Assembly: GCF_037042905.1 (NCBI RefSeq)
Contig: NC_087246.1
Coordinates: forward strand, 67,394,001 to 67,458,000
Direction: 5' to 3'
From: Lytechinus pictus
Taxonomy: Eukaryota
Length of the DNA: 64,000 nt
Part shown: one piece after another, positions 7,874 to 51,575 of the stretch
How positions within the stretch are numbered: position 1 is the stretch's first letter
Layout of the letters: each line of letters begins with the position of its first letter
Made by a program: the position numbers and the translations under genes
The notes under the pieces: generated by a model
The model's database searches: none
The model's input: the letters and a program-made list of their open reading frames with translations, nothing else
Told to the model about the DNA's origin: nothing

Positions 7874-7983
7874 TTAACAACCATAGACATAGACATACAA
7901 TGGATTAGGGGAAATTACTCTGAATCCATGCAATAAAATTACTTTCAAGTTGTTTCTCGAAGCTTACATTCTCGTTACATTCC

Positions 7984-8159
7984 CAGGTGGGTGTTTCATA
8001 AAGCTGTTGGTAAAGTTACGCACAACTTTACGCACGACTGGAATATGTTCTTAGGTCATAAATCAATTATATAGGGATATCACATAGCACAAGAAAGGAT
8101 CACCAGTCGTGCGCAAAGTCATTCGTATCTTACGAACAGCTTTATGAAAGACCCACCTG
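7984..8159. mobile_element. Short palindromic MITE (Harbinger-like)
   Basis: caggtgggtgtttcataaagctgtt / aacagctttatgaaagacccacctg; relative at about 12229-12400. Confidence 0.65.
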
Positions 8160-8359
8160 TACCTAATCACTCGAACTGAACATCATTACAATATACAAGC
8201 AGTGAAATTTACAAATCTAAATTTATTGGATGAATGTTCTAATCGAAGTGTAATCGAATATCATATTACTCGATACATAATTGTAATATACCCGATGGTT
8301 AGCCCCCAGCACCATTACAAGATTATGAGCACGAGAGCAGAAGGATAGGGACAGATAGA

Positions 8360-8556
8360 TAATAATAATAATAATAATAATAATAAACAGTTCTTGTATA
8401 GCGCATATCACGATTATGAATAATGTCTCTATGCGCTTCCAAAGGACTTGGATATTATTACCCCAGCTGTAGCTTGGCAGCCGTAATTACTAAGATTACA
8501 GCGCACACGCATTTCAAGGAATAAATTCCTGCCAGGTACCCATTCACCTCACCTGA
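8360..8556 (-). mobile_element. 5'-truncated SINE with (TTA)n tail
   Basis: Shares gtacccattcacctcacctg and the tail region with the SINE at 18247-18531. Confidence 0.55.
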
Positions 8557-8700
8557 TCACCCTAAGCATGTTAAGGGCTTAACAGGGCGAACGATTATAC
8601 TCTGTTTTATTTTTTAATTCGAAAAATACTTCTTGGTAATCCTTGCAAATGGAATACTGGACTTCTCGGTCCGTGTATATATGCGTATTGAAATGCCATT

Positions 8701-8842
8701 TTAAACGCCCTGTCTATTTTGAGAGAGGACGCCCTCTCTAAATCTCTCGGCTGCCTCTGTGAAGTCTGAAGGAGTATTGAGGCCCAGATGTTGACGGGGA
8801 CCCGGTGCCATTTCCATACGAGTGAAATCATCCTGTCCAATT
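8701..8842 (-). CDS. Avidin-family protein, last coding exon (final strand + C-terminal extension)
   Basis: gtctcttccag|A ATT GGA; reads IGQDDFTRMEMAPGPRQHLGLNTPSDFTEAAERFREGVLSQNRQGV*, matching avidin VGINIFTR; possible AATAAA on the minus strand at 8606-8611. Confidence 0.88.
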
Positions 8843-9052
8843 CTGGAAGAGACATAAACAAATTGACAAGAAAATGAAATAAGAGGTTTGATAAACGTTA
8901 TTGTGACGGGTACCATTGTCGCCGTGATCAAGATGAACAAACTACAATGTATGTAATTCAGTCAGCTGGACATTCATCCATGATGGACACTTAATTAAGA
9001 TATACACAATGTCTGTAATTTCTTTAATTTTTGTACGAAACAAAAATCTAAC

Positions 9053-9257
9053 CTGTTGGATGACCAATGGTCCTCGCAGGTGTCGACCTCACTGGTCAAG
9101 ATCCAGGTGGTCTTCATGATTTCTTGACCTTGGCAAACATGGCACAGACCTGTCCAGGCCGTGGCCGAAGCGCCGTTACTCCAGAGGACTGAGAAGGCAA
9201 TTGCATTATGGGATCCGTCCATGGAAGTCCATCCCGAGACACGTCCAGGACCAGAAC
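9053..9257 (-). CDS. Avidin-family protein, coding exon 4
   Basis: taccttcag|GT TCT...AAC AG|gttaga; reads GSGPGRVSGWTSMDGSHNAIAFSVLWSNGASATAWTGLCHVCQGQEIMKTTWILTSEVDTCEDHWSSNR, matching avidin FTVNW...STTVFTGQC...EVLKTMWLL...DDW. Confidence 0.92.
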
Positions 9258-10106
9258 CTGAAGGTAATACAAAAAGTCAGAAATTATATTTATTTGAAAA
9301 AACATAATCGCGGCTGGGGGCACGAGGCGACACTCTGCTGCTGTACAGAATTCCAAGGGGGGCACGTCCCATTTCCGATCCCACCCCCATCCTCAGTCCC
9401 CAGGATCGCCGTATGATATAAGTACTCTATTACTCATTAATTTGAAAGCTGGGAAAGTCAATTTAGTTCTTAGCAGACATTGCTTGATACAAAAGCTTTA
9501 AGGTGGCATCGACTTGTCGAGATGGCAAAATGATTTAATCTCCCTAAGTCGACATACAACAAAATTTTATGTCAACAAGGCGAGATAAGTTATCGAGCTC
9601 TCCATTTCGAAAAGAACGCTAACCTGCTATCATCCTCTTTTTAATATTTGTTTGAGATGAGGGCGCGCTACACATAAATGCTACACCGAGCCGCGTTGAC
9701 GCTTTATAATTATGAGGGGAAAAAAATCACCAACTGTTAGGAGATCTGAGGAAGAGAGAGATGGGGGGGGGGGTGAATGGATCGAGCGAGAGAGAGAGAG
9801 AGGGGGAGGGGGAAGATGACCGGATGGGGAATTCAAGACTACAACTTAGTAGTCAATTATGTATTTCGTCTTAGAAAAAAAGAAGATGCAGTGAAGAAGA
9901 CGTGCTCATCTGACTTCCAAATCATGAAAAAGAAGTTGTAGTTTAGTTTTTGCACAAACAGGGAGATGCACCAGAAAAATATCTGAGAGGAGGGGTCGAA
10001 GCTAATCCGAAATCTTATATTAATAAAAAAATATTCAAAGATATTAATATTTCCAGTCTGGAGTACGCCTTTGGCAATGTTTGGCTTTAACAGATAAGAT
10101 ACCCAC

Positions 10107-10232
10107 CTGCAGCTCCGGGTCTCCTCTCCACTGCAGTCCTGAATTCGCCTGTCACGTGACCTGTTTCTCTATCGACGGTGAGGATGATTTCGGAACCGAG
10201 ACTGTTGTACCACTTACCCGTCACGTTGCATT
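10107..10232 (-). CDS. Avidin-family protein, coding exon 3 (start of avidin beta-barrel)
   Basis: tctcttctacccag|AA TGC...GCA G|gtgggt; reads ECNVTGKWYNSLGSEIILTVDRETGHVTGEFRTAVERRPGAA, matching avidin CSLTGKWTNDLGS...FTGTYITAV. Confidence 0.9.
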
Positions 10233-11009
10233 CTGGGTAGAAGAGACAACATGACATTACGTCACAATGGCATATATCAAAGTTACGACTGCACTCGACC
10301 GAGCGTAAAATAGAGCGACTTCACCGAATATCATAAATAGTTTTGCATGGACATGGCTGGAGGTAGTGTAAAAAAAAAGGATGGGAGCGATTCGTAAAAA
10401 TAAGCGAAATTCTAGCAATCCAATACCAATTCTGCGGTGGAAAATGGATTGAGCTCAAACAGCCAAGGGTGGATATGGGGGAGGGGGCTTCCGTTAGACC
10501 CAGTTTTTTTTTTTATTATAAGGGCGATTGGTTCTATGTTGCCGACCTTTGACCACTGTTGTTTTGGGGGAGAGGGTAGCATATTTCTTTCATTTTCTTA
10601 CCCCAGTGGACGTCCCACTTTCCCCACTGACTCTAATCAACCCAAGCTCAGCTCCTTTTCCCCCAACACATCATGGCCGTACAAAACGGTGTATAATATA
10701 GGCCTATATATTTTGTGTTTCAATCCTTCTTGTTTGTTAGTTGTATCCCAGATCCTTCAAATGACAATAAAAAAAACTTGATCAGCTCTGTCTCTTTGCT
10801 TCCTTGTAGATTATCGTTTTGTGAAAAGAAAACATTGTAGGGCCCCGTTATGCATAATCATTATTCGAAATTAGATTTTTTTTTTTATTGATATCGAGGC
10901 AAAGGTCTATATTTGAAATAATTAAAATCATATGAAAGGGACATGCAAATTTGAGAAGAAAAGTGTTACTTGATAGAACATTGCACATTCATGTCACCAT
11001 GTATTCTAT

Positions 11010-11444
11010 CCGGGGGCCAGTCAAATTTATTCCTGTACATATGCGTGACCAAATTATTTCCAAACACCCCCTAAACGAGTTTTTTTCTCTGTGTGCAAAA
11101 TAAACCCCATAACAAGTTTTTCGCGTGCTATATTTACACATTTTGGCCCCGAAACAAGTTGTCGTCAGAATATGACCCCGGGGAAAAAGCATAGGGAAAC
11201 TCCCTAAACACGTTTGGCTAGTCTTAAAAAAAAGCTTTGGAGAAAAAACATACCCTAGCTACGTTTGAACCCGCGATTGACCATTGACCAGTCTTTCAAA
11301 ACCACCCATTTTCTTGAAAATCGGTGTTTTTGATATCTTTAACGAGTACACGCGCGGCCCTCGTCTAAAACTGAAAACCACCCCTTTAAACGCGTTTTTT
11401 TTTGGTCACGCATGTGTACATCAATATATTTGACTGCCCCCCGG
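11010..11444. mobile_element. MITE with 9-bp TSD (Mutator-like) in avidin-gene intron
   Basis: gtattctat-CCGGGGGCCAGTCAAAT...ATTTGACTGCCCCCCGG-gtattctat. Confidence 0.8.
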
Positions 11445-11776
11445 GTATTCTATGATCATTACCACTGGGAAAACTGAATTGAGCAAATCAGTGAGAAATA
11501 TAACTACACGGCAGCAACTACAATTAACGTATATGCCTAAAAAGAAATATTTGGTGCATTTCTTTTCATCAGGAACAGAAACGTGAGGAATATAGATGAA
11601 TATACATGTATGTTAAATGGGGTTAAATGTAGACACGTTTTTCTTTAAAATGAGACTGAACTACAACGAATAATGTGTATGCCTACATTATGATTATGGA
11701 GCTATAATAGCTCAATCCATGGTATGATTTTAAAAAATTGTGAACAATAGAGGCAAACTGTACATTAAGTATTTAC

Positions 11777-11816
11777 CAGTGGCTGGTTCAAAATGGGTAA
11801 TCTGGTCACTAGGGGT
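11777..11816 (-). CDS. Avidin-family protein, coding exon 2 (40-nt micro-exon)
   Basis: ttttattttgtttgcag|ACC CCT AGT GAC...GCC ACT G|gtaaat; reads TPSDQITHFEPAT; supplies exactly the phase 0 to 1 shift needed between exons 1 and 3. Confidence 0.7.
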
Positions 11817-12828
11817 CTGCAAACAAAATAAAAGATGAAGTAACAAGTAAACAAAAAAGATTTTAGACTTGTCATTTTATGACGGTTTGTTAATTGGTAT
11901 AGTTCAACAATGGATTTATAGTGAAAGATCTAGGTGGTAATTACGCGGCCCCAGTTTGATCCTTTATACAGTATCATGCATTATAGTGCGTTTAGATATC
12001 CGGCCTGGATAACATAATAGGGCCTATAATTTGTCATAAGTTTGGAGTAATTAGTGAGGCTGGCTTTTATAGCACTCCTAAAATTATGGAAAATCAACAC
12101 CGGCATAATGAGCGGGTATAGATTTTGGTTATATAAATCTCAGAATTGTGAAATAAAAAACATACAATTTTTCAATTTAGAATCAATAAACGATATTGTA
12201 CAATGCCACGACACCCTCCATCATAATCCAGGTGGGTGTTTCATGAAGCTGTTCGTAAATTAAAAGCGACTTTAAGAACGACTGCATTGAGAACCTTTCT
12301 TTTGCGCTAAATAATCATGAACATTTAATGGTGAATATCATATACCACAAGAAAGGATCACCGGTCGTTCTTAAAGTCAGCTTTATAAGATGGCCCCATG
12401 AATGCTATCACGATCCCGGAATATATTCGTGATGTTCGTCATTCAAAAAGCTGAATTTAATCACGAAACATCTCAATCACAATCCCTCGAAATAAAGTCG
12501 CATCGCATAGTATTCATGTTTGAACATCACTTAATTGGCTGACAACTGTCCAATTTTGGACAGTAAAGTAGCTGTTAATGAGGAATAAAGTCTATCTTTC
12601 TACCATGTCTATAGGGATTTTTTTTTATATATTGACGAAAAACGTTAAATGCCGTATGGCAAAACACTGTAGCAATTTAAGTACTGAATGATAAGGCTTT
12701 TATAAGAATGAAAAGTGTAAAATCAAATAAATAATTTAGGTGAAAATACTGGACAAAGCAAAAGGCATATTAACTATGAGAGAGAGAGAGGAGGGGGAAG
12801 GGGGAGAGAGAGACGGGTGGATGTTCAC

Positions 12829-12969
12829 CTCGTAAACAATGTCCTGGAGCTGGACCTGTTCCACACCAAAACGATGACGATGATGACCATGGTGCTCTTG
12901 GCGGAGAGGGTTGTTGAACGCACTCGCGCTGAAGACGAGCCCGACAACGAGCATGAACCAATTCAACAT
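12829..12969 (-). CDS. Avidin-family secreted protein, coding exon 1 (signal peptide + His-rich extension)
   Basis: Acceptor ctctctccag|ATC ATG; reads MLNWFMLVVGLVFSASAFNNPLRQEHHGHHRHRFGVEQVQLQDIVYE; donor GAG|gtgaac, phase 0; 141 nt. Confidence 0.8.
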
Positions 12970-13088
12970 GATCTGGAGAGAGAGGGGGAGAGAAATACAA
13001 ATCCTCAATGCACGTAAGGAAATGATCGTGACGTGCACGACGTTAATACAAAGGTAATTATGATGATAGTGATGATGATGATGATGAT

Positions 13089-14175
13089 CAGTGGCGTAAC
13101 TACGGGGGGGGGGCCTGGGGTGGCATGTGCCCCCCCCCCCAACGGCTGACCAAAAAAAACGGGGAAAAGGAGAAAAAGAGGGAGAAAGGAAGAGAAACGT
13201 GGGAAAGAAGAAATTATTCATTATAATGTTATATTATATTATAATTGTTATGTTATAATTATTACATAAGAAACATTTTTATCATAACTTTATGAAACAT
13301 AATTTGCTCAGGGCCTATGTTTTCATTGTTCGTGGTGCTCGCATTGTCTGTTTAATGAGATATATAATCCTGTTGAACTAAAACCTCCCGTTTTCAAGTC
13401 AATATACACCAAATATATTTCCTCGCACTTCGAGTTATTATTGTTTTATGTAGTGGCATATGCTTCTTTTTCATGACTACTTCAAGTGATTGCCCCATGT
13501 TAAGGTCTTGATATAAAACATTTAATGATTTCCTGTCCGTGATTACGTTCGCATTAGTCATGTTAGTGGTTAGGTGAGATATGTCTGCTCTCCATGAATT
13601 CCTAAAAATTGTCCTTAAAATGTTTCGGTCAATATATACAAAAATTTCAGCTCGCGCTTCGCACTCGCATCATTTGGTTAGTGAAATACGCGTGGTCTTA
13701 GTGAATTCCTACAAACAAGCCTTAGAATGCCCCACTTCAGGTCTGAATTATCTATATTATTTAAATTTTCAGCTCGCGCTTCGCGCTCGCAATATTTGAT
13801 TAGTGAGATGCGTATGATAATCATGATTAGAATGACTACAAAAAGTGCTTCATGTGTTCAGATGTAATTGGCACTCGCATTACATGACTATGGTGAGATA
13901 TGTATACTCTAAATGGATTCCTTGAAAAATAGTCCTTAAAATGTTTCTGTTTGGGGTCAATATATAAAAAAAAGGTTAGCTCGCGCTTCCCGCTCGCATT
14001 GTTTAGCGAGACAGGTACATATCATGATTACAAAAAAAATATTATAATTTCCCTTTTTAGGTCTGAATATAAAAAAATTTCAACTCGCGTTTCGCATTAT
14101 TTGATCAGTGAGATTATTATCCGTTTAATGGCATTGTCCTTAAAATGTCTCTATTAGGTAAGTATACCTGGCAAC
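13089..14175. mobile_element. hAT-like non-autonomous element, right end uncertain
   Basis: Starts CAGTGGCGTAACTACGGGGGGG; carries recurring gctcgcgcttcgcgctcgca motifs shared with the element at 26258-27366. Confidence 0.55.
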
Positions 14176-15670: not shown

Positions 15671-15970
15671 CCTATGCATTCTCTGTTACAATATGGAGAA
15701 AATTGTTGACAAAATCTGGTATATGCCAGTATTAGACTTCAAAGAACGACTGATCGAGGAAGAATAATCTGTGGTGCTTTGAAGTTTGATCCCAGCTATT
15801 CCGATTATGATCCGCAGCCGCACCTCAGAACCAACCAAGCCAATCCAGAACCGATTGATGATCGCCCCGATGGGGTTATATTGTGTATCGGATCTAGTTC
15901 CTGTTTTCAGTTCCCCCTATGTGACCAGGGTATAACTAATGAACTTCTGCAACGATCGAATGCCAGGAAC
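15671..15970 (-). other. Candidate non-coding 5' UTR exon of the avidin-family gene
   Basis: Acceptor ataccttcag|G and strong donor ATAG|gtaagt bound a 300-nt GC-richer segment with stops in all three frames; coding exon 1 has an acceptor 3 nt before its ATG, so an upstream exon is required. Confidence 0.45.
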
Positions 15971-22943: not shown

Positions 22944-25243
22944 GTAACGGATCTGTGATGTGGTCAACTTCATCGAAATACCCACCCCCCTCTCCTTCGG
23001 ATTCATCTTCATATTCTTCGCAGTTCTCTAGTACCGTCACGGCGGCAGAATCGATCCCAACCTGCTATCGACAGATGTGCAGCGAAAAAGATGGTGGACC
23101 TGTCACCTGTCGTTGTGACAAACGGTGTTTCTTCTTCGGGGATTGCTGCTACGGTATCAGAGTCCCACCACCATTTGTTCTAGAACGGTTACAATTTGAC
23201 ACGACCGTATGGGACTGTGTTGAAGACACGTTCCTACCGCCGATCTATCAGGAACTCAACCATGGCTATCGCATGGTCACACGGTGCCCACAGAGCTGGG
23301 ACAAGGACGATGTCCGGAGGAAATGCGAAAATGTTTCAAGCAACGATACTGAACATATCATGTACACGGACGGAGATGACTACTATAGGAACGTTCACTG
23401 CGTCATATGTAGTGGTATTGACGAATCTTCAGTATCCCCTATCTATGGCTCGGATCAATGCTCGTGGCAATCAAAGAACGAACTGAAATGTTTACTAGAT
23501 GCCAATAGCACCTCCCCTATCCCAGACGACATGGACAACAGTCTTGACAACTATACACTTGTAGAACTATACCAAGAAATTCCAATACCGCGTTTCTGTC
23601 TGCTGGATGTTGAGGAAACTTGTCCAAATGATAACGGGGACCTGAACTTGCAAAATAAGTGTCGAATGTACTTTGTTCCGGTCTTGTTTAATAGTTCTAT
23701 ATATAAAAATCCCTTTTGTGCTCTGTGCAACGACCAACGTGAGGACCTTCATTCATATTGCAAAATACCGGTGAGGAAAAAAGAGGGTGAGAGAGGTGGC
23801 GATTATTTCAATGTAGGGATTGGAGCTGCCTTTAGCGGTATAGTGAATAGGGAGCAAACGGCTGAAAATAAAGATGAGCAGGTCTATCGACACCCACTTT
23901 TAATCAGTTCTATCTGGCCCTTGTGCAAGTCAAAGCAGGCATATTTAATCTATAAGAATGGAAAGGTGGAATGTTTCGGAAATGAATCCTGTTCTATAAA
24001 CTCAAACATCCCCAAAGGTGATGCAAGAGAAGTAGATGATTTTCTATTTGAGATAAATCTTGCTGATGCATTGTCCTCTCATTTAGACCTTGCGGATATC
24101 CCGCCATTGGTAACCTTTCTGCAACGTCTCCGCAACCGAAGCGATGAAATGTATATACCTCAAGTACTTACTGTAATGCAGTGGTGCCATACTCTGAAGT
24201 ATAATCAAGAGTCTCTAGGCAAATCCAATTGCTCAAATGAATTGTATGAAGGGGAGCCAAATAAATTCTCACCGTTCGTCCTGTCAAACGATTCTTACAT
24301 ATTCTTTAACGGATCGTTCGTGAAACCCATCTGGTGGTTTAACCAGACTGCTCTCTGGTTTGAAGACACCAATTGGATACCGTATCCTAAGATGTATCTA
24401 TGCGGTACGGAGCATGAAGTTCAGTTCTGCCCTTCGATAGCGGTGGCGACAGACTCAGTTGAATGGGTAGAACGCTTTAACAAAACCCTCCTGAAATACA
24501 AGAACAATATCTATTTCCAAGAGGATTTCTTTTTGCACCCTGATGGGCGGATTCGCATATGTATTGATGAGGAAAACCAACTTGAAGACTTTGTTTATAC
24601 AGGACTGAATATTGTTGGAAATGTAGCCTTCGCAGTGTCTTCAGCTTGCCTGTTTGCTACTTTGTTGACGTATCTTGTTTTCTCGGAGCTGCAGAACAGA
24701 CAGGGTATAGTGGTCATCAATTTCATTGTGGCTCTGCTTCTGGGGCAAATCTTTCTGCAGTATGTGGGCTACCACTTCTCTGATCGGTTCATTCCATGTC
24801 TTGCATTTGCGTCTCTATCGCATTTCTTCTTCTTGGCGTCCTTTGTCTGGACAACAGTACTGGCCTGGGATCTTAGAAGAAGCCTCTCGGCATCGGTCAT
24901 CTTTAGGAGTGGGCAATCGTGTTTCCACACAACTGCGTATGCTTTGATCGGTTGGGGAATTCCTCTAGTGATAACATCGACAACTCTCCTGATGCAATTA
25001 GGTGGATTCACGGACGAGCCCATCCTGGAATATGGTGGTCCCGCCTGTTGGTTTGCTACAAGGTTGTCGAGTCTGGCAGTCTTCTTTGGGCCTATCTGTC
25101 TTTGCCTCCTAACCAACTGCCTCCTTTTCATTGGAACCATGCGGAATTTGCACTCTACGAATAAATCTACTGCAATAGCGAGGAAGAACTCCGGTAGTGC
25201 CAGACAGAAGCAACTCACTTTGGAACTTAGGATCTTTGTCAAG
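22944..25243 (+). CDS. Class B (secretin/adhesion/Methuselah-like) GPCR, exon 2: SMB-like domain, Cys-rich ectodomain, TM1-TM5
   Basis: tactttcatccag|GT AAC; 2300-nt open exon; CRCDKRCFFFGDCC (somatomedin-B-like); TM motifs SSACLFATLLTYLVFSELQN, HFFFLASFVW, YALIGWGIP, CWF, FFGPICLCLLTN; donor AAG|gtaaga. Confidence 0.93.
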
Positions 25244-26218
25244 GTAAGAAGCATGGACATGATCATTATTATAAAAGAGAGTAGATAATCCTTTCATGAT
25301 AAATTAGAAAGTTCCTATTATCAGGATGATGTTATCTAAAGACTCGAATATTGAGTAAAATTTTACTCAGTGCTTTTAGAGTGTATAATAAGAAAAATAA
25401 ATGCTAAGGGGTTGGTATCAAGCATTTACTCGAATAGGTATTCATAAAACCTACATTTGTTATTGATTTTTTTCTACAAAATATGAGACCATGAGAGCAC
25501 GCGCGGTTCTTGACGATTTTTTTATATATTTATTTAGTTATTATTATTACTATTTTGAGGGGGAGGCTTCTGAGGGCTCGAGAATATTTTGAGCCTGGTC
25601 ATTTAATACATGGTAAATGGGCTATCATTTAAATAATTGGAATGGGAGCCTATACTGACTAAGCAGATGGGAATTGGTGACTGTAATACCAGCCCGCCTT
25701 CTCCCCTCGGCAAAAAAATTATTTATAATAATTTGTAATTCAAGAGAGCGTTGCGACTGAGGGAGGAATAATCAACATAGAATGTATTTCAGAACTATTT
25801 CATCTACAATACACCCATCAGGGCATGACAGTTCGATTCACGATAACTGGCAGTCAGTAAGAGGGACCGTGTTGTAACCATCTCCAGGCTTTTCAATTAT
25901 TTACATGTATACGTGAGTGAGCATAGCGAACGAGCGATAATTGATCCTATTTTCAATAGCTATACTTCGCAGTTTTTACAGCAGGCTATTGCAGGGGATA
26001 TGGGGAATTTGGCTTTTAATGTCAATGACACCCCCTTAAGCATGTTGATCGAGGAGACATTTTTAAAGTGAAACTTAGAATTTGGAGCACCTTCTAATGA
26101 ACCCCCAATTAAATATATGTCTAAACTTCCTAAAATTCCTGATGTGAATACTCATCATGGTGAAAATAACATGACACTGGGATTGCTGCCCTGCATGAAA
26201 CAGTAGTCAACTGTATGG

Positions 26219-49661: not shown

Positions 49662-50045
49662 TTAACTGCATGTAGACACTATAAAATACCGAACCCCAAA
49701 CAGGAAAACATTGCAACAGTATAGGTTAAAGCTGATTGGCTGGCAACCTTGTATCATTACTAAAAATATGAATCATTCTAAGGGCGAGAATTTACTCTTT
49801 CCTGCACAATGAAAAAACAAAGGAAAGTCACATTTTCGACTTCATAATTGGTCGTTTTATGGTGTATTTATTCATTTGATTGTAATCTTCTTTCAATTCG
49901 GTATAAGCCTACATGTTAAAATGGTGCATAAAGTGCAGCATGGAATGTTTGTTGGAGGTGTTGTTGTTTCTGAACTATTATTCTCTAGGATGTTTTTACT
50001 CTTCATTTATTAAAACAAAACTAAAAAAAAACACCTCGTAAATAC

Positions 50046-50363
50046 CTCTTGCTGTACAAACCACCGAAGCATCATCCGCATGAGCACAGTCATGTGTTCC
50101 TATTTGATGGCTCCTAGAGCACTCAAACAGATCTTCTTCTCCTCCGTAACAAAAGGTATTGTCCATCCATATTGGACCACTTCCAGGACCGAAGGCTGCG
50201 TAAACAAGGGCTAGGTCCGCCCCGATATAGTCCAAGTCTTTGCACACGACCTCAGCCTCTTCAATACCCCAATGATCATCGCAGACCGTCCCCCATTCAC
50301 CGTTGTAAAATACCTCAACTCTTCCCTCAAAAGGGAAATCCCCGTTCATCAATCGCGTATTTT
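50046..50363 (-). CDS. SRCR membrane receptor, SRCR domain 1 exon
   Basis: tttacag|AA AAT...AGA G|gtattt; RLMNGDFPFEGRVEVFYNGEWGTVCDDHW...CAHADDASVVC; 318 nt, phase 1-1. Confidence 0.93.
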
Positions 50364-51575
50364 CTGTAAAGATAGATGCAAATTGTATTTTTTTTTTTAA
50401 TAATGCATACAATTCCGACATATTGGGTAAAACATAAAGCATTATTTTTAATGTTTTATGATTTTCCAATATGTTGGAACTGTGGAAAATGAGACGATGG
50501 GAGAGAAGGAGAAAGGGGAGAAAGATGCAAAATTAATTGAATACCTCATTGATTTATATATAATTTATATCATATTATTCATATCTATAATCTATATCAT
50601 ATATGAAAATATATAATTATGTACCATATACATCATACTTCTGTTCTTCCGCGGTATGCCCATTTCTCCAAACAAGTATACATTTGGCCATCTAATAGTA
50701 TTTCAAAATTATGATTATTCTGAAAACATTAACATAAAAATGAAGAATTGCATACTAGTAAGGCCTATGTGTCCTTATAAACAAATATTTTACCCCATTG
50801 CCCGGATGAAAAAACTGTTTCTTGCTTTGGCATAACATGACTATACTCTATCATTCTATCGCGGCGTTGTAGAATTCATTGAGTAAATTTACGAATTTGG
50901 AACTCACCCGATTGCACTGTTATGAAATAAAACAGGCTGCATAATACTACCAGTCTTGGGGTAGATAACAGCTTCACAGAAGCAAATAGATCCATACTTA
51001 TCATAAAAATATCCAAGAAATTCAGCATCTACGCCGGCCGAATACAGAAACTAGAACGATACAATGATGATTCACGAATGGAAATATATAGTACATTAAA
51101 TGTCACGAATAGAGAGAGGGGGGGGGGGGAGATGTCTCCGCGATGTCACTGGCTACTTTCTGTTGACATTTCCCTACATTAGCATTTCCGACTACGTCTA
51201 GCAGAAATTAATGATTAACTATATTGGATATCAAAATCAGGCCCCAAGAAGAGTCCAACGGTCTAGCCAAAATACTGACGATGAAATGCGTGTTTGCAGT
51301 TCATAGTTCAAGTCTTGTTTAATCACGTTAATCGACGTTTTTATAAAAATAGATTTTTTTTTTTCTTGGAGCAAAGACGTATACTGTCAAAATGGTCAAT
51401 AATTATGAGGGGACTAAATGTATGTAGAAATGTAAAAATATTTCAAATTATGCGGTTAATGATGACGTTGAATATCTCAGTGACGTCATTTCACATATTC
51501 TTTTCTTTTACTGTTTGCTGTTTCACGAATTCGAAGTGAAGTCATACTATACATGACTATATATTCACATCGAAC

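What the first reader, a model, noticed from the sequence alone, without database searches (positions are those of the whole stretch)
8701..12969. Stand-alone avidin with fibropellin-type cysteines and a largely intact biotin pocket
Seen: five exons splice in frame into a 217-aa secreted protein with a full avidin barrel and no EGF or CUB modules. Recalled knowledge: in chicken avidin numbering it keeps N12, L14, S16, T35, W70, S75, T77, W97 and W110, has F79W and N118D (streptavidin-like), and differs at Y33F, F72N and S73G. It also has the extra Cys pair (LCHVC, DTCED) and the GQD..TR ending of the sea-urchin fibropellin avidin-like domain, which lacks S16/W70/W110 and is reported not to bind biotin. 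Inference: this could be a true biotin-binding echinoderm avidin linking vertebrate avidins and fibropellins, possibly acting in nutritional immunity.
Basis: partly seen in the sequence, partly recalled or inferred. Interest (0 to 1): 0.8.

Follow-up and report, generated by a model that had tools for sequence, protein, structure and literature searches.

The report
Stand-alone sea-urchin avidin gene
This is a real, expressed sea-urchin (Lytechinus pictus) gene for a small secreted avidin-type protein that very probably binds the vitamin biotin; public databases already hold it under the misleading automatic name "fibropellin-3-like", and a sister protein from another urchin ("strongavidin") is already listed as a working avidin, so it is a new member of a known family, not a new kind of thing.

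Summary
On the minus strand of window 8701-12969, five exons with canonical GT-AG borders splice in frame into a 217-aa protein. Pfam Avidin is the only domain it matches. RNA reads and an independent oligo-dT contig span three of the four coding junctions.

Refinement: a sixth, 5' exon ending at 15671 supplies an earlier in-frame ATG (15679-15677). The product is then 221 aa and identical to RefSeq XP_054748158.2, "fibropellin-3-like", of Lytechinus pictus.

The AlphaFold model matches zebavidin (TM 0.92), and a homotetramer is predicted.

Not novel as a kind:
- Orthologues exist in S. purpuratus (XP_790505, 85% identical), Diadema and probably sea stars, with more distant stand-alone relatives in crinoids, sea cucumbers and hemichordates.
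- The sister paralogue, strongavidin (S. purpuratus), is listed as a functionally verified avidin and shares the 72/73/79/118 changes.
- The "fibropellin-type" Cys pair is widespread in invertebrate avidins. It sits at avidin positions 86 and 106, in the predicted 1-4 subunit interface, so it probably forms inter-subunit disulfides.

Biotin binding and any immune role remain untested.

The parts
15671..15765 (-). 5' exon (5'UTR plus first three codons ATG CAT AGG); start codon at 15679-15677; donor GT at 15670-15669. The upstream end is not mapped; 15765 is only the extent covered by the RNA contig.
   Evidence: RNA contig of run X5 continues 94 nt beyond 12973; exact match at 15672; in-frame TAA upstream and no earlier ATG
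12829..12972 (-).
   Evidence: acceptor AG at 12974-12973
11777..11816 (-). Coding exon 3 (40 nt), linker
   Evidence: junction 10232>11777 in reads and contig
10107..10232 (-). Coding exon 4: avidin strands beta1-beta3 and the start of loop L3,4 (N74, L76, S78, F95, T97 in 221-aa numbering)
   Evidence: Pfam Avidin positions 1-37, 34.5 bits; junction reads
9053..9257 (-). Coding exon 5: avidin strands beta4 to L7,8 (W132, S137, T139, W141, C145, C148, W158, C167, W171)
   Evidence: Pfam Avidin positions 44-107, 64.2 bits; junction reads
8701..8842 (-). Last coding exon: strand beta8 (D179), conserved C-terminal tail APGPR...EGVLSQNRQGV, and the stop codon at 8703-8701
   Evidence: junction 8842>9053 in two raw RNA runs and one contig
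8656..8700 (-). Start of the 3'UTR, as far as the RNA contig covers it
   Evidence: X5 contig begins at 8656

Best explanation
The locus is the single pocket-intact avidin gene of Lytechinus pictus. It encodes a 221-aa precursor with a signal peptide (about residues 1-21), a disordered linker with a His-rich stretch (22-62), an eight-stranded avidin barrel (63-186) and a conserved, partly helical C-terminal tail (187-221). Shown here: the gene structure, its splicing and transcription, family membership, the fold, and conservation of the biotin-contact residues. Inferred: the secreted protein forms an avidin-type tetramer (dimer of dimers) and binds biotin in the barrel. In that model W171 (avidin W110) is lent to the neighbouring subunit. 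C66-C145 is the intrachain disulfide of avidin (C4-C83). C148 and C167 (avidin D86 and I106) form disulfides between subunits across the 1-4 interface, stapling the oligomer covalently. Because Tyr33 is Phe and loop L3,4 is zebavidin-like (TAVE..GAAG), affinity is probably high but below that of chicken avidin. By analogy with avidin, zebavidin and lancelet avidins, the likely biological role is extracellular biotin sequestration, either antimicrobial or egg/embryo protection. This last step is not tested.
For: Gene model and RNA support. Identity to XP_054748158.2. Pfam Avidin over the full profile and nothing else. Sequence matches to avidin, zebavidin and streptavidin chains, E 1e-17 to 1e-29. 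AlphaFold2 model has mean pLDDT 83.8 (barrel above 90); best PDB match is zebavidin 4bj8, TM 0.92 (target-normalised), rmsd 1.5 A, 40% identity. Pocket positions N12, S16, T35, W70, S75, T77, W97 and W110 are identical to avidin; 79 is W and 118 is D, as in strongavidin. These are invariant in all six sea-urchin orthologues down to Diadema (57% overall identity), while the eight fibropellin-type loci of the same genome have lost S16, W70 and W110. Strongavidin, listed as functionally verified (PMC8033661), is the sister of this clade (support 97/89). Zebavidin, with the same loop motif, binds biotin (kdiss 6.5e-3 s-1; PMC3811995). Predicted homotetramer: score 0.89 against best control 0.02, partner pLDDT at least 72, runs agree in at least 84% of contacts. 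The mark was reached by 21 of 30 proteins solved as homo-pairs and 0 of 23 solved as single chains; on eukaryotes by 17 of 29 and 0 of 30. The tool warns that the pass may come from memory of solved avidin complexes and that its calibration held two copies, not four. The interfaces reproduce avidin's 1-3 contacts (157, 176, 178 = M96, V115, I117) and 1-2 contacts (W171), and put C148 and C167 in the copy1-copy4 interface. Cys86 and Cys106 co-vary (Fisher p 0.0006) independently of C4/C83 (p 0.0014; cross pairs p above 0.2), and four domains carry only the 86/106 pair. Avidin Ile106 lies in the 1-4 interface (PMC1831776).
Against: No binding measurement exists for this protein or its orthologues. 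Tyr33, a ureido-oxygen hydrogen-bond donor, is Phe; T38, A39 and T40 of loop L3,4 are E, R and R. The authors of PMC8033661 themselves warn that binding cannot be judged reliably from residues. Strongavidin's 'verified' status has no primary reference in that paper. The tetramer prediction can reflect memorised avidin complexes. The inter-subunit disulfide rests on interface membership, co-variation (not corrected for phylogeny) and my recollection of the engineered D86C/I106C avidin (Nordlund 2003, not retrievable). No coordinates were available to measure the S-S distance. Expression seen is low (depth 5 or less in 6% samples of three runs) and the tissue is unknown. The signal peptide was judged only by hydropathy and the ASA|F motif.
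Confidence: 0.72

Rival explanations
1. It has the avidin fold but binds biotin only weakly or not at all. Like the fibropellin domain, it would serve mainly as a disulfide-linked oligomerisation or matrix module, or bind another small hydrophobic ligand.
For: Y33F is fixed in sea-urchin and sea-star orthologues, and L3,4 positions 38-40 are E/R/R instead of T/A/T. It shares the Cys pair and C-terminal motif with non-binding fibropellin domains. The conserved extra N- and C-terminal segments suggest functions beyond the barrel. PMC8033661 cautions that residue inspection is unreliable.
Against: The two changes reported to abolish binding when copied from fibropellin into avidin (W70R, W110K; PMC8033661) are absent. 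All four Trp and all the Ser/Thr/Asn/Asp hydrogen-bond positions except Tyr33 are conserved over the whole sea-urchin clade. Such conservation is hard to explain without ligand binding. Zebavidin has the same TAVE..GAAG loop motif and binds biotin. From my own knowledge, unchecked here, Tyr-to-Phe at this site costs streptavidin only about 1 kcal/mol; only the existence of that mutant's structure (1swu) was seen.
Confidence: 0.2
2. The model is an annotation artefact: the avidin exons are really the 3' end of a larger fibropellin-type gene, or a transcribed pseudogene.
For: RefSeq names it fibropellin-3-like. The exon1-exon2 junction was not directly covered by reads. Expression is low.
Against: The RNA-supported 5' exon carries an in-frame TAA just before the first ATG and no other ATG in 220 nt. 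There are no EGF or CUB matches. The frame is open through all exons. The same 213-232-aa architecture, with signal peptide and tails, is conserved in L. variegatus, S. purpuratus and Diadema. The echinoid clade has short branches and an invariant pocket.
Confidence: 0.03

Closest known systems
Strongavidin (S. purpuratus 'avidin-related protein 4/5', XP_030849314 / XP_011666509; listed among functionally verified avidins in PMC8033661)
   Same: A stand-alone sea-urchin avidin and the sister branch of this gene's clade (97/89). About 48% identical over the barrel. Shares G73, W79, D118, all four Trp and the Cys at positions 86 and 106.
   Different: It is a separate, long-branched paralogue. 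S. purpuratus also has the true orthologue, XP_790505 (85% identical), and L. pictus has no strongavidin gene. Strongavidin keeps Tyr33, has a shorter L3,4 loop, lacks C83, and in the available models lacks the signal peptide and His-rich linker.
Zebavidin (zebrafish; PDB 4bj8; PMC3811995)
   Same: Best structural match (TM 0.92, rmsd 1.5 A, 40% identity). Same TAVE..GAAG loop L3,4 motif. Secreted tetrameric biotin binder.
   Different: Zebavidin keeps Tyr33 and has neither the 86/106 Cys pair nor the His-rich linker and C-terminal tail.
Fibropellin C-terminal avidin-like domain (for example L. pictus fibropellin-3, XP_054771358.1)
   Same: Same fold family. Shares the four Cys (QCHLC, NTCED) and the GQD..TR ending. 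Both belong to the ambulacrarian avidin radiation.
   Different: Fibropellins are CUB + EGF mosaic proteins. Their avidin-like domain has C14, D16, R70 and K110 and is reported not to bind biotin (PMC8033661 citing Yanai 2005). Only 39% identical. They form a separate clade with 100/99 support.
Chicken avidin / AVR4
   Same: Pfam Avidin family and the C4-C83 disulfide. N12, L14, S16, T35, W70, S75, T77, W97, L99 and W110 are identical. Tetramer interfaces are predicted at equivalent residues.
   Different: 31-34% identity. Differences are Y33F, F72N, S73G, F79W, N118D, a different L3,4 loop, the extra Cys pair, and the extra N- and C-terminal segments.
Amphioxus avidins (Bjavd1/2, Guo et al. 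2017, as cited in PMC8033661)
   Same: Invertebrate deuterostome stand-alone avidins. A Branchiostoma relative (P0023) has the same four Cys and is about 47% identical. They are reported to bind biotin and respond to infection.
   Different: Different phylum. They keep Tyr33. It was not established whether P0023 is Bjavd1 or Bjavd2.

Membership tests
Avidin family (Pfam PF01382) | Sequence match to the family profile above the curated cut-off over the whole domain | tested here: met
   114 bits against a cut-off of 24, profile positions 1-116 of 116; exons matched separately
Avidin family (Pfam PF01382) | Eight-stranded up-and-down beta-barrel superposable on solved avidins | tested here: met
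   AlphaFold2 barrel pLDDT above 90 with 8 strands; TM 0.85-0.92 to zebavidin, AVR4, xenavidin and avidin
Functional (biotin-binding) avidins | Conserved biotin-contact residues (N12, S16, Y33, T35, W70, S75, T77, F/W79, W97, W110, N/D118) | tested here: inconclusive
   10 of 11 are kept or conservatively kept; Y33 is F; loop L3,4 contacts differ
Functional (biotin-binding) avidins | Measured high-affinity biotin binding | not testable with these tools
   Needs recombinant protein; no published measurement was found for this orthologue group
Functional (biotin-binding) avidins | Dimer or tetramer with W110 donated across the 1-2 interface | tested here: inconclusive
   Homotetramer predicted: score 0.89 against best control 0.02, with W171 in an inter-copy interface. 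It is a prediction only and may come from memory of solved avidin complexes.
Fibropellins (the RefSeq name of this gene is 'fibropellin-3-like') | Mosaic architecture: CUB and tandem EGF repeats followed by a C-terminal avidin-like domain | tested here: not met
   Avidin is the only Pfam domain in 221 aa; the 5' exon has an in-frame stop before the ATG. L. pictus fibropellin-3 has CUB + 7 EGF + Avidin.
Fibropellins (the RefSeq name of this gene is 'fibropellin-3-like') | Degenerate pocket (W70R, W110K, S16D) | tested here: not met
   W132, W171 and S78 are retained; the protein falls outside the fibropellin-type clade, which has 100/99 support
Strongavidin orthologue | Groups with S. purpuratus strongavidin, not with another S. 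purpuratus gene | tested here: not met
   Its S. purpuratus orthologue is XP_790505 (85% identical); strongavidin is the outgroup to the six-species clade

The most novel reading that the evidence does not exclude
The most novel reading not excluded has three parts. (1) This conserved echinoid protein, and with it most invertebrate avidins, is a naturally disulfide-stapled tetramer: Cys86-Cys106 bridges across the 1-4 interface, the same solution that (as I recall) protein engineers introduced into chicken avidin. (2) The sea-urchin-specific His-rich arm (EHHGHHRHR) adds metal binding or pH-dependent anchoring. (3) One secreted molecule would then withhold both biotin and transition metals from microbes, or be tethered in the egg or larval extracellular matrix beside the fibropellins.
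Probability: 0.15. Interest if true: 0.55.

Novelty: new member of a known kind. Interest (0 to 1): 0.35.

Why it matters
- It corrects a misleading automatic name. 'Fibropellin-3-like' hides what is the one pocket-intact avidin of this genome, among the nine avidin-domain loci found.
- It shows that the sea-urchin avidin studied so far, strongavidin, is a divergent side copy. This gene is the conserved sea-urchin lineage (Lytechinus to Diadema), with similar stand-alone avidins in the other echinoderm classes and hemichordates.
- It offers a natural experiment next to the non-binding fibropellin domains of the same genome: which substitutions switch biotin binding off.
- It suggests that inter-subunit disulfides are an ancestral animal avidin feature lost in vertebrates.
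- If the protein binds biotin tightly and is covalently stapled, it could interest avidin biotechnology.
- None of this changes basic understanding of the family.

Tried and rejected
- Nordlund 2003 (engineered avidin disulfides), Yanai 2005 (fibropellin domain), Marttila 2003 (Tyr33 mutants) and the 2006 engineered-avidin review could not be read here. Full-text searches for D86C, I106C and Avd-cci found nothing relevant. The statement that D86C/I106C were engineered as 1-4 inter-subunit bridges, and the size of the Y33F effect, therefore rest on my memory only.
- Searching papers for the RefSeq accessions of this gene, its orthologues and strongavidin found none. A search for echinoderm avidin or coelomocyte work found nothing relevant.
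- Rfam found nothing in the window.
- The idea that the extra Cys pair is an intrachain, fibropellin-specific feature was rejected. The pair is widespread, and both residues fall in the predicted inter-subunit interface.
- The idea that this gene is the L. pictus strongavidin orthologue was rejected by the tree and by XP_790505.
- A second sequencing-run search with exon 5 alone found holders in 8 studies and several related species. Only one is on record as RNA and the metadata are coded, so tissue or stage (egg, coelomocyte) could not be addressed.
- The high RNA depth at 8268-8635 is not the gene's 3'UTR. It comes from a dispersed repeat.
Full report
**Observation.** Reading the minus strand of window 8600-13000 in three frames and locating the splice motifs gave five exons: 12969-12829, 11816-11777, 10232-10107, 9257-9053 and 8842-8701. 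Each has an AG acceptor and a GT donor. Joined, they give an open frame of exactly 217 codons, with the stop codon ending at 8701.

**Family.** The in-frame pieces of exons 3 and 4 each pass the Pfam Avidin (PF01382) cut-off and cover profile positions 1-37 and 44-107. The full protein scores 114 bits over positions 1-116 of 116 and matches no other Pfam family. By sequence it matches solved avidin, AVR4, xenavidin, zebavidin and streptavidin chains, with E-values of 1e-13 to 1e-29.

**Transcription and the true 5' end.**
- I laid three raw RNA-seq runs of the same species and one oligo-dT RNA run labelled marine metagenome on window 7900-13400.
- Junction reads with CT..AC ends (GT..AG on the minus strand) were found for 8842>9053 (X12 and X13), 9257>10107 and 10232>11777 (X12).
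- One 564-nt contig of the independent oligo-dT run covers exons 5-4-3-2 and starts 45 nt past the stop codon.
- All reads lie with the first mate on the plus strand, as expected for a minus-strand RNA in a stranded library.
- Depth is low, 5 or less with about 6% of each run read.
- The 12829>11816 junction was not directly observed.
- A second contig covers 12891-12973 and then continues for 94 nt that do not fit locally. That sequence lies at window 15672 onward.
- The upstream exon ends at 15671 with a GTAAGT donor, and the acceptor AG sits at 12974-12973.
- The joined mRNA reads TAA CAG AGA ATG CAT AGG ATC ATG.
- The six-exon CDS is 666 nt. Its 221-aa product is identical to protein P0001, the 100% hit of the representative search.
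- That protein is RefSeq XP_054748158.2, 'fibropellin-3-like [Lytechinus pictus]', on a 70.6-Mb contig, which fits the window's position on contig C2.
- The organism is therefore L. pictus and the gene is already predicted, under a misleading name.

**Architecture.**
- Residues 1-21 have a charged start (MHR), a hydrophobic core and an ASA|F motif. I read this as a signal peptide from hydropathy only.
- Residues 22-62 are predicted disordered and hold a His-rich stretch, EHHGHHRHR. Similar stretches occur in L. variegatus, S. purpuratus and Diadema.
- Residues 63-186 form the barrel.
- Residues 187-221 form a tail with a conserved APGPR motif and an EGVLSQ.RQG ending. It is partly predicted as a helix with fair confidence.
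- The AlphaFold2 model, built on a 73-sequence alignment, has mean pLDDT 83.8, with the barrel above 90. It shows eight strands and the short helix in loop L7,8.
- Its best PDB match is zebavidin 4bj8, at TM 0.92 (normalised to the target), rmsd 1.5 A and 40% identity. AVR4, xenavidin, avidin and streptavidin follow.

**Pocket.** HMMER aligns residues 64-185 to avidin 2-124. An 80-domain alignment gave the residue table below, in avidin numbering.
- Kept: N12, L14, S16, T35, W70, S75, T77, W97, L99, W110.
- Changed: Y33F, F72N, S73G, F79W, N118D. In loop L3,4, T38/A39/T40 become E/R/R.
- The core positions are invariant in all six sea-urchin orthologues, including Diadema at 57% overall identity.
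- Phe33 is shared only by the sea-urchin and sea-star proteins. The crinoid, holothurian, hemichordate, lancelet and strongavidin sequences keep Tyr.

**Paralogues in the same genome.** A six-frame search of the 812-Mb assembly with the Avidin profile found nine loci. The eight others are fibropellin-type, with NECND in place of N.LGS, R at position 70 and K at position 110. One of them is L. pictus fibropellin-3, whose protein has CUB, seven EGF and an Avidin domain. The window gene is therefore the only pocket-intact avidin found in this genome, and it fails the defining architecture of fibropellins.

**Relatives and what is already known.**
- Orthologue-level proteins: L. variegatus XP_041453924 (same 90% cluster), S. 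purpuratus XP_790505 'fibropellin-3 isoform X1' (85% identical) and Diadema antillarum 'avidin-like' (57%).
- Similar stand-alone proteins occur in Asterias, the crinoids Anneissia and Antedon, Holothuria and Apostichopus, the hemichordates Ptychodera and Glandiceps, and Branchiostoma.
- The literature search turned up 'strongavidin'. It is listed among 14 functionally verified avidins in Laitinen et al. 2021 (PMC8033661), and its sequence is in that paper's Additional file 2.
- That sequence corresponds to S. purpuratus 'avidin-related protein 4/5' (P0089/P0090). It is not the orthologue of the window gene.
- In a maximum-likelihood tree of 74 avidin domains (128 columns, so deep forks are unresolved), four results stand out: the six sea-urchin orthologues form a clade (95/95), strongavidin is its long-branched sister (97/89), fibropellin-type domains form their own clade (100/99), and vertebrate avidins form another (100/94).
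- The best match to strongavidin in the L. pictus assembly is the window gene itself, at 51% identity, so L. pictus appears to lack strongavidin.
- The 2021 paper gives no primary reference for strongavidin's verification, and I found no paper on this orthologue group.

**The extra cysteines.**
- The four Cys sit at avidin positions 4, 83, 86 and 106.
- Positions 86 and 106 carry Cys in most invertebrate avidin domains (placozoan, annelid, tardigrade, hemichordate, lancelet, echinoderm, strongavidin, fibropellin) and never in the vertebrate ones. The pair is therefore not a fibropellin signature.
- Presence of Cys at 86 and at 106 is associated (Fisher p 0.0006), as is 4 with 83 (p 0.0014). 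The four cross combinations are not (p above 0.2). Four domains carry only the 86/106 pair. This count is not corrected for phylogeny.
- Position 86 ends strand beta6 at the closed end of the barrel, and position 106 lies in the L7,8 helix. From my knowledge of the avidin fold, these are far apart within one subunit.
- The BBP-A structure paper places avidin Ile106 in the 1-4 subunit interface, contacting Lys94 of the other subunit (PMC1831776).
- The four-copy prediction gave a score of 0.89 against a best control of 0.02. Partner pLDDT was at least 72 and the runs agreed in at least 84% of contacts.
- The tool's calibration counts: the mark was reached by 21 of 30 proteins solved as homo-pairs and 0 of 23 solved as single chains. 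On eukaryotes it was 17 of 29 and 0 of 30. The tool warns that the pass may be from memory, since avidin tetramers are solved, and that its calibration used two copies.
- In that prediction residues 148 and 167 of both chains lie in the copy1-copy4 interface. Residues 157, 176 and 178 (avidin M96, V115, I117) contact copy 2, and W171 (avidin W110) lies in the copy 3 interface. This is the avidin dimer-of-dimers pattern.
- I recall that Nordlund et al. 2003 engineered D86C plus I106C into avidin to make 1-4 inter-subunit bridges, but I could not retrieve the paper.
- My inference, not shown, is that C148 and C167 form inter-subunit disulfides.

**Function.**
- The conserved pocket, the contrast with the degenerate fibropellin domains next to it in evolution, and the sister position of a protein listed as a verified binder together make biotin binding the best explanation. 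I put it at about 0.7.
- So does the zebavidin-like loop. Zebavidin binds biotin with a fast off-rate and is expressed in gonads and oocytes.
- Affinity is probably below that of chicken avidin, because of Y33F and the loop.
- A defensive or egg-protective sequestration role is an analogy to avidin, zebavidin and amphioxus avidins (PMC8033661) and was not tested.

**Verdict.** It is not a missing link and not new as a kind. It is a mis-named, uncharacterised member of the animal avidin family, and it is the conserved counterpart of strongavidin.

Noticed in passing
window 8400-8555 (just 3' of the avidin stop codon): RNA depth jumps to about 970x here, and over 90% of the reads run on into unlike sequence at 8555. 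The 156-bp stretch has at least 40 copies at 100% identity on many contigs (over 1000 first-look candidates). It is a truncated copy of a very young, highly transcribed dispersed repeat, not part of the gene's 3'UTR. It has no Rfam match.
   Followed up: partly
window 7986-8149 and 12317-12378 (intron 1 of the avidin gene): Many RNA reads join these two stretches in opposite orientation or 'go back' between them. This indicates copies of another repeat family in inverted orientation flanking most of the gene. Read depth of 10-20x on both strands suggests the transcripts come from other copies.
   Followed up: no
window 22955-25288 (+): A single 777-aa open frame whose C-terminal part matches the secretin-family 7TM receptor domain (PF00002, 81.5 bits). 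It is probably an exon of an adhesion- or secretin-type GPCR gene about 7 kb upstream of the avidin gene's 5' exon.
   Followed up: partly
window 49996-50469 (-): An open frame with a full SRCR (scavenger receptor cysteine-rich) domain (PF00530, 99.6 bits), presumably an exon of one of the large sea-urchin SRCR gene family.
   Followed up: no
P0001 residues 28-37 (window about 12860-12890, minus strand): A His-rich stretch, EHHGHHRHR, lies between the signal peptide and the barrel. His-rich stretches sit at the same place in S. purpuratus (HHEHHGDHRRNR) and Diadema (HHPHHHRHHGHR), but not in sea-star, crinoid or hemichordate relatives. It could be a metal-binding arm or a processing site (RRNR in S. 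purpuratus resembles a furin site).
   Followed up: partly
P0004, P0006-P0010, P0014 (annelids Ridgeia and Owenia, and unnamed others): Proteins of 330-416 aa with two tandem avidin domains. In most, both domains have largely intact pockets and the 86/106 Cys pair, making them natural 'dual-chain' avidins. The second domains lack Cys4 but keep Cys83.
   Followed up: no
S. purpuratus P0049 ('hyalin', 829 aa) and P0073 (1436 aa): Fibropellin-type degenerate avidin-like domains also end other large extracellular proteins. One is annotated as hyalin. P0073 begins with a hydrophobic stretch that looks like a membrane receptor, though I did not run Pfam on it. The non-binding domain therefore seems to be a reused C-terminal module.
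   Followed up: no
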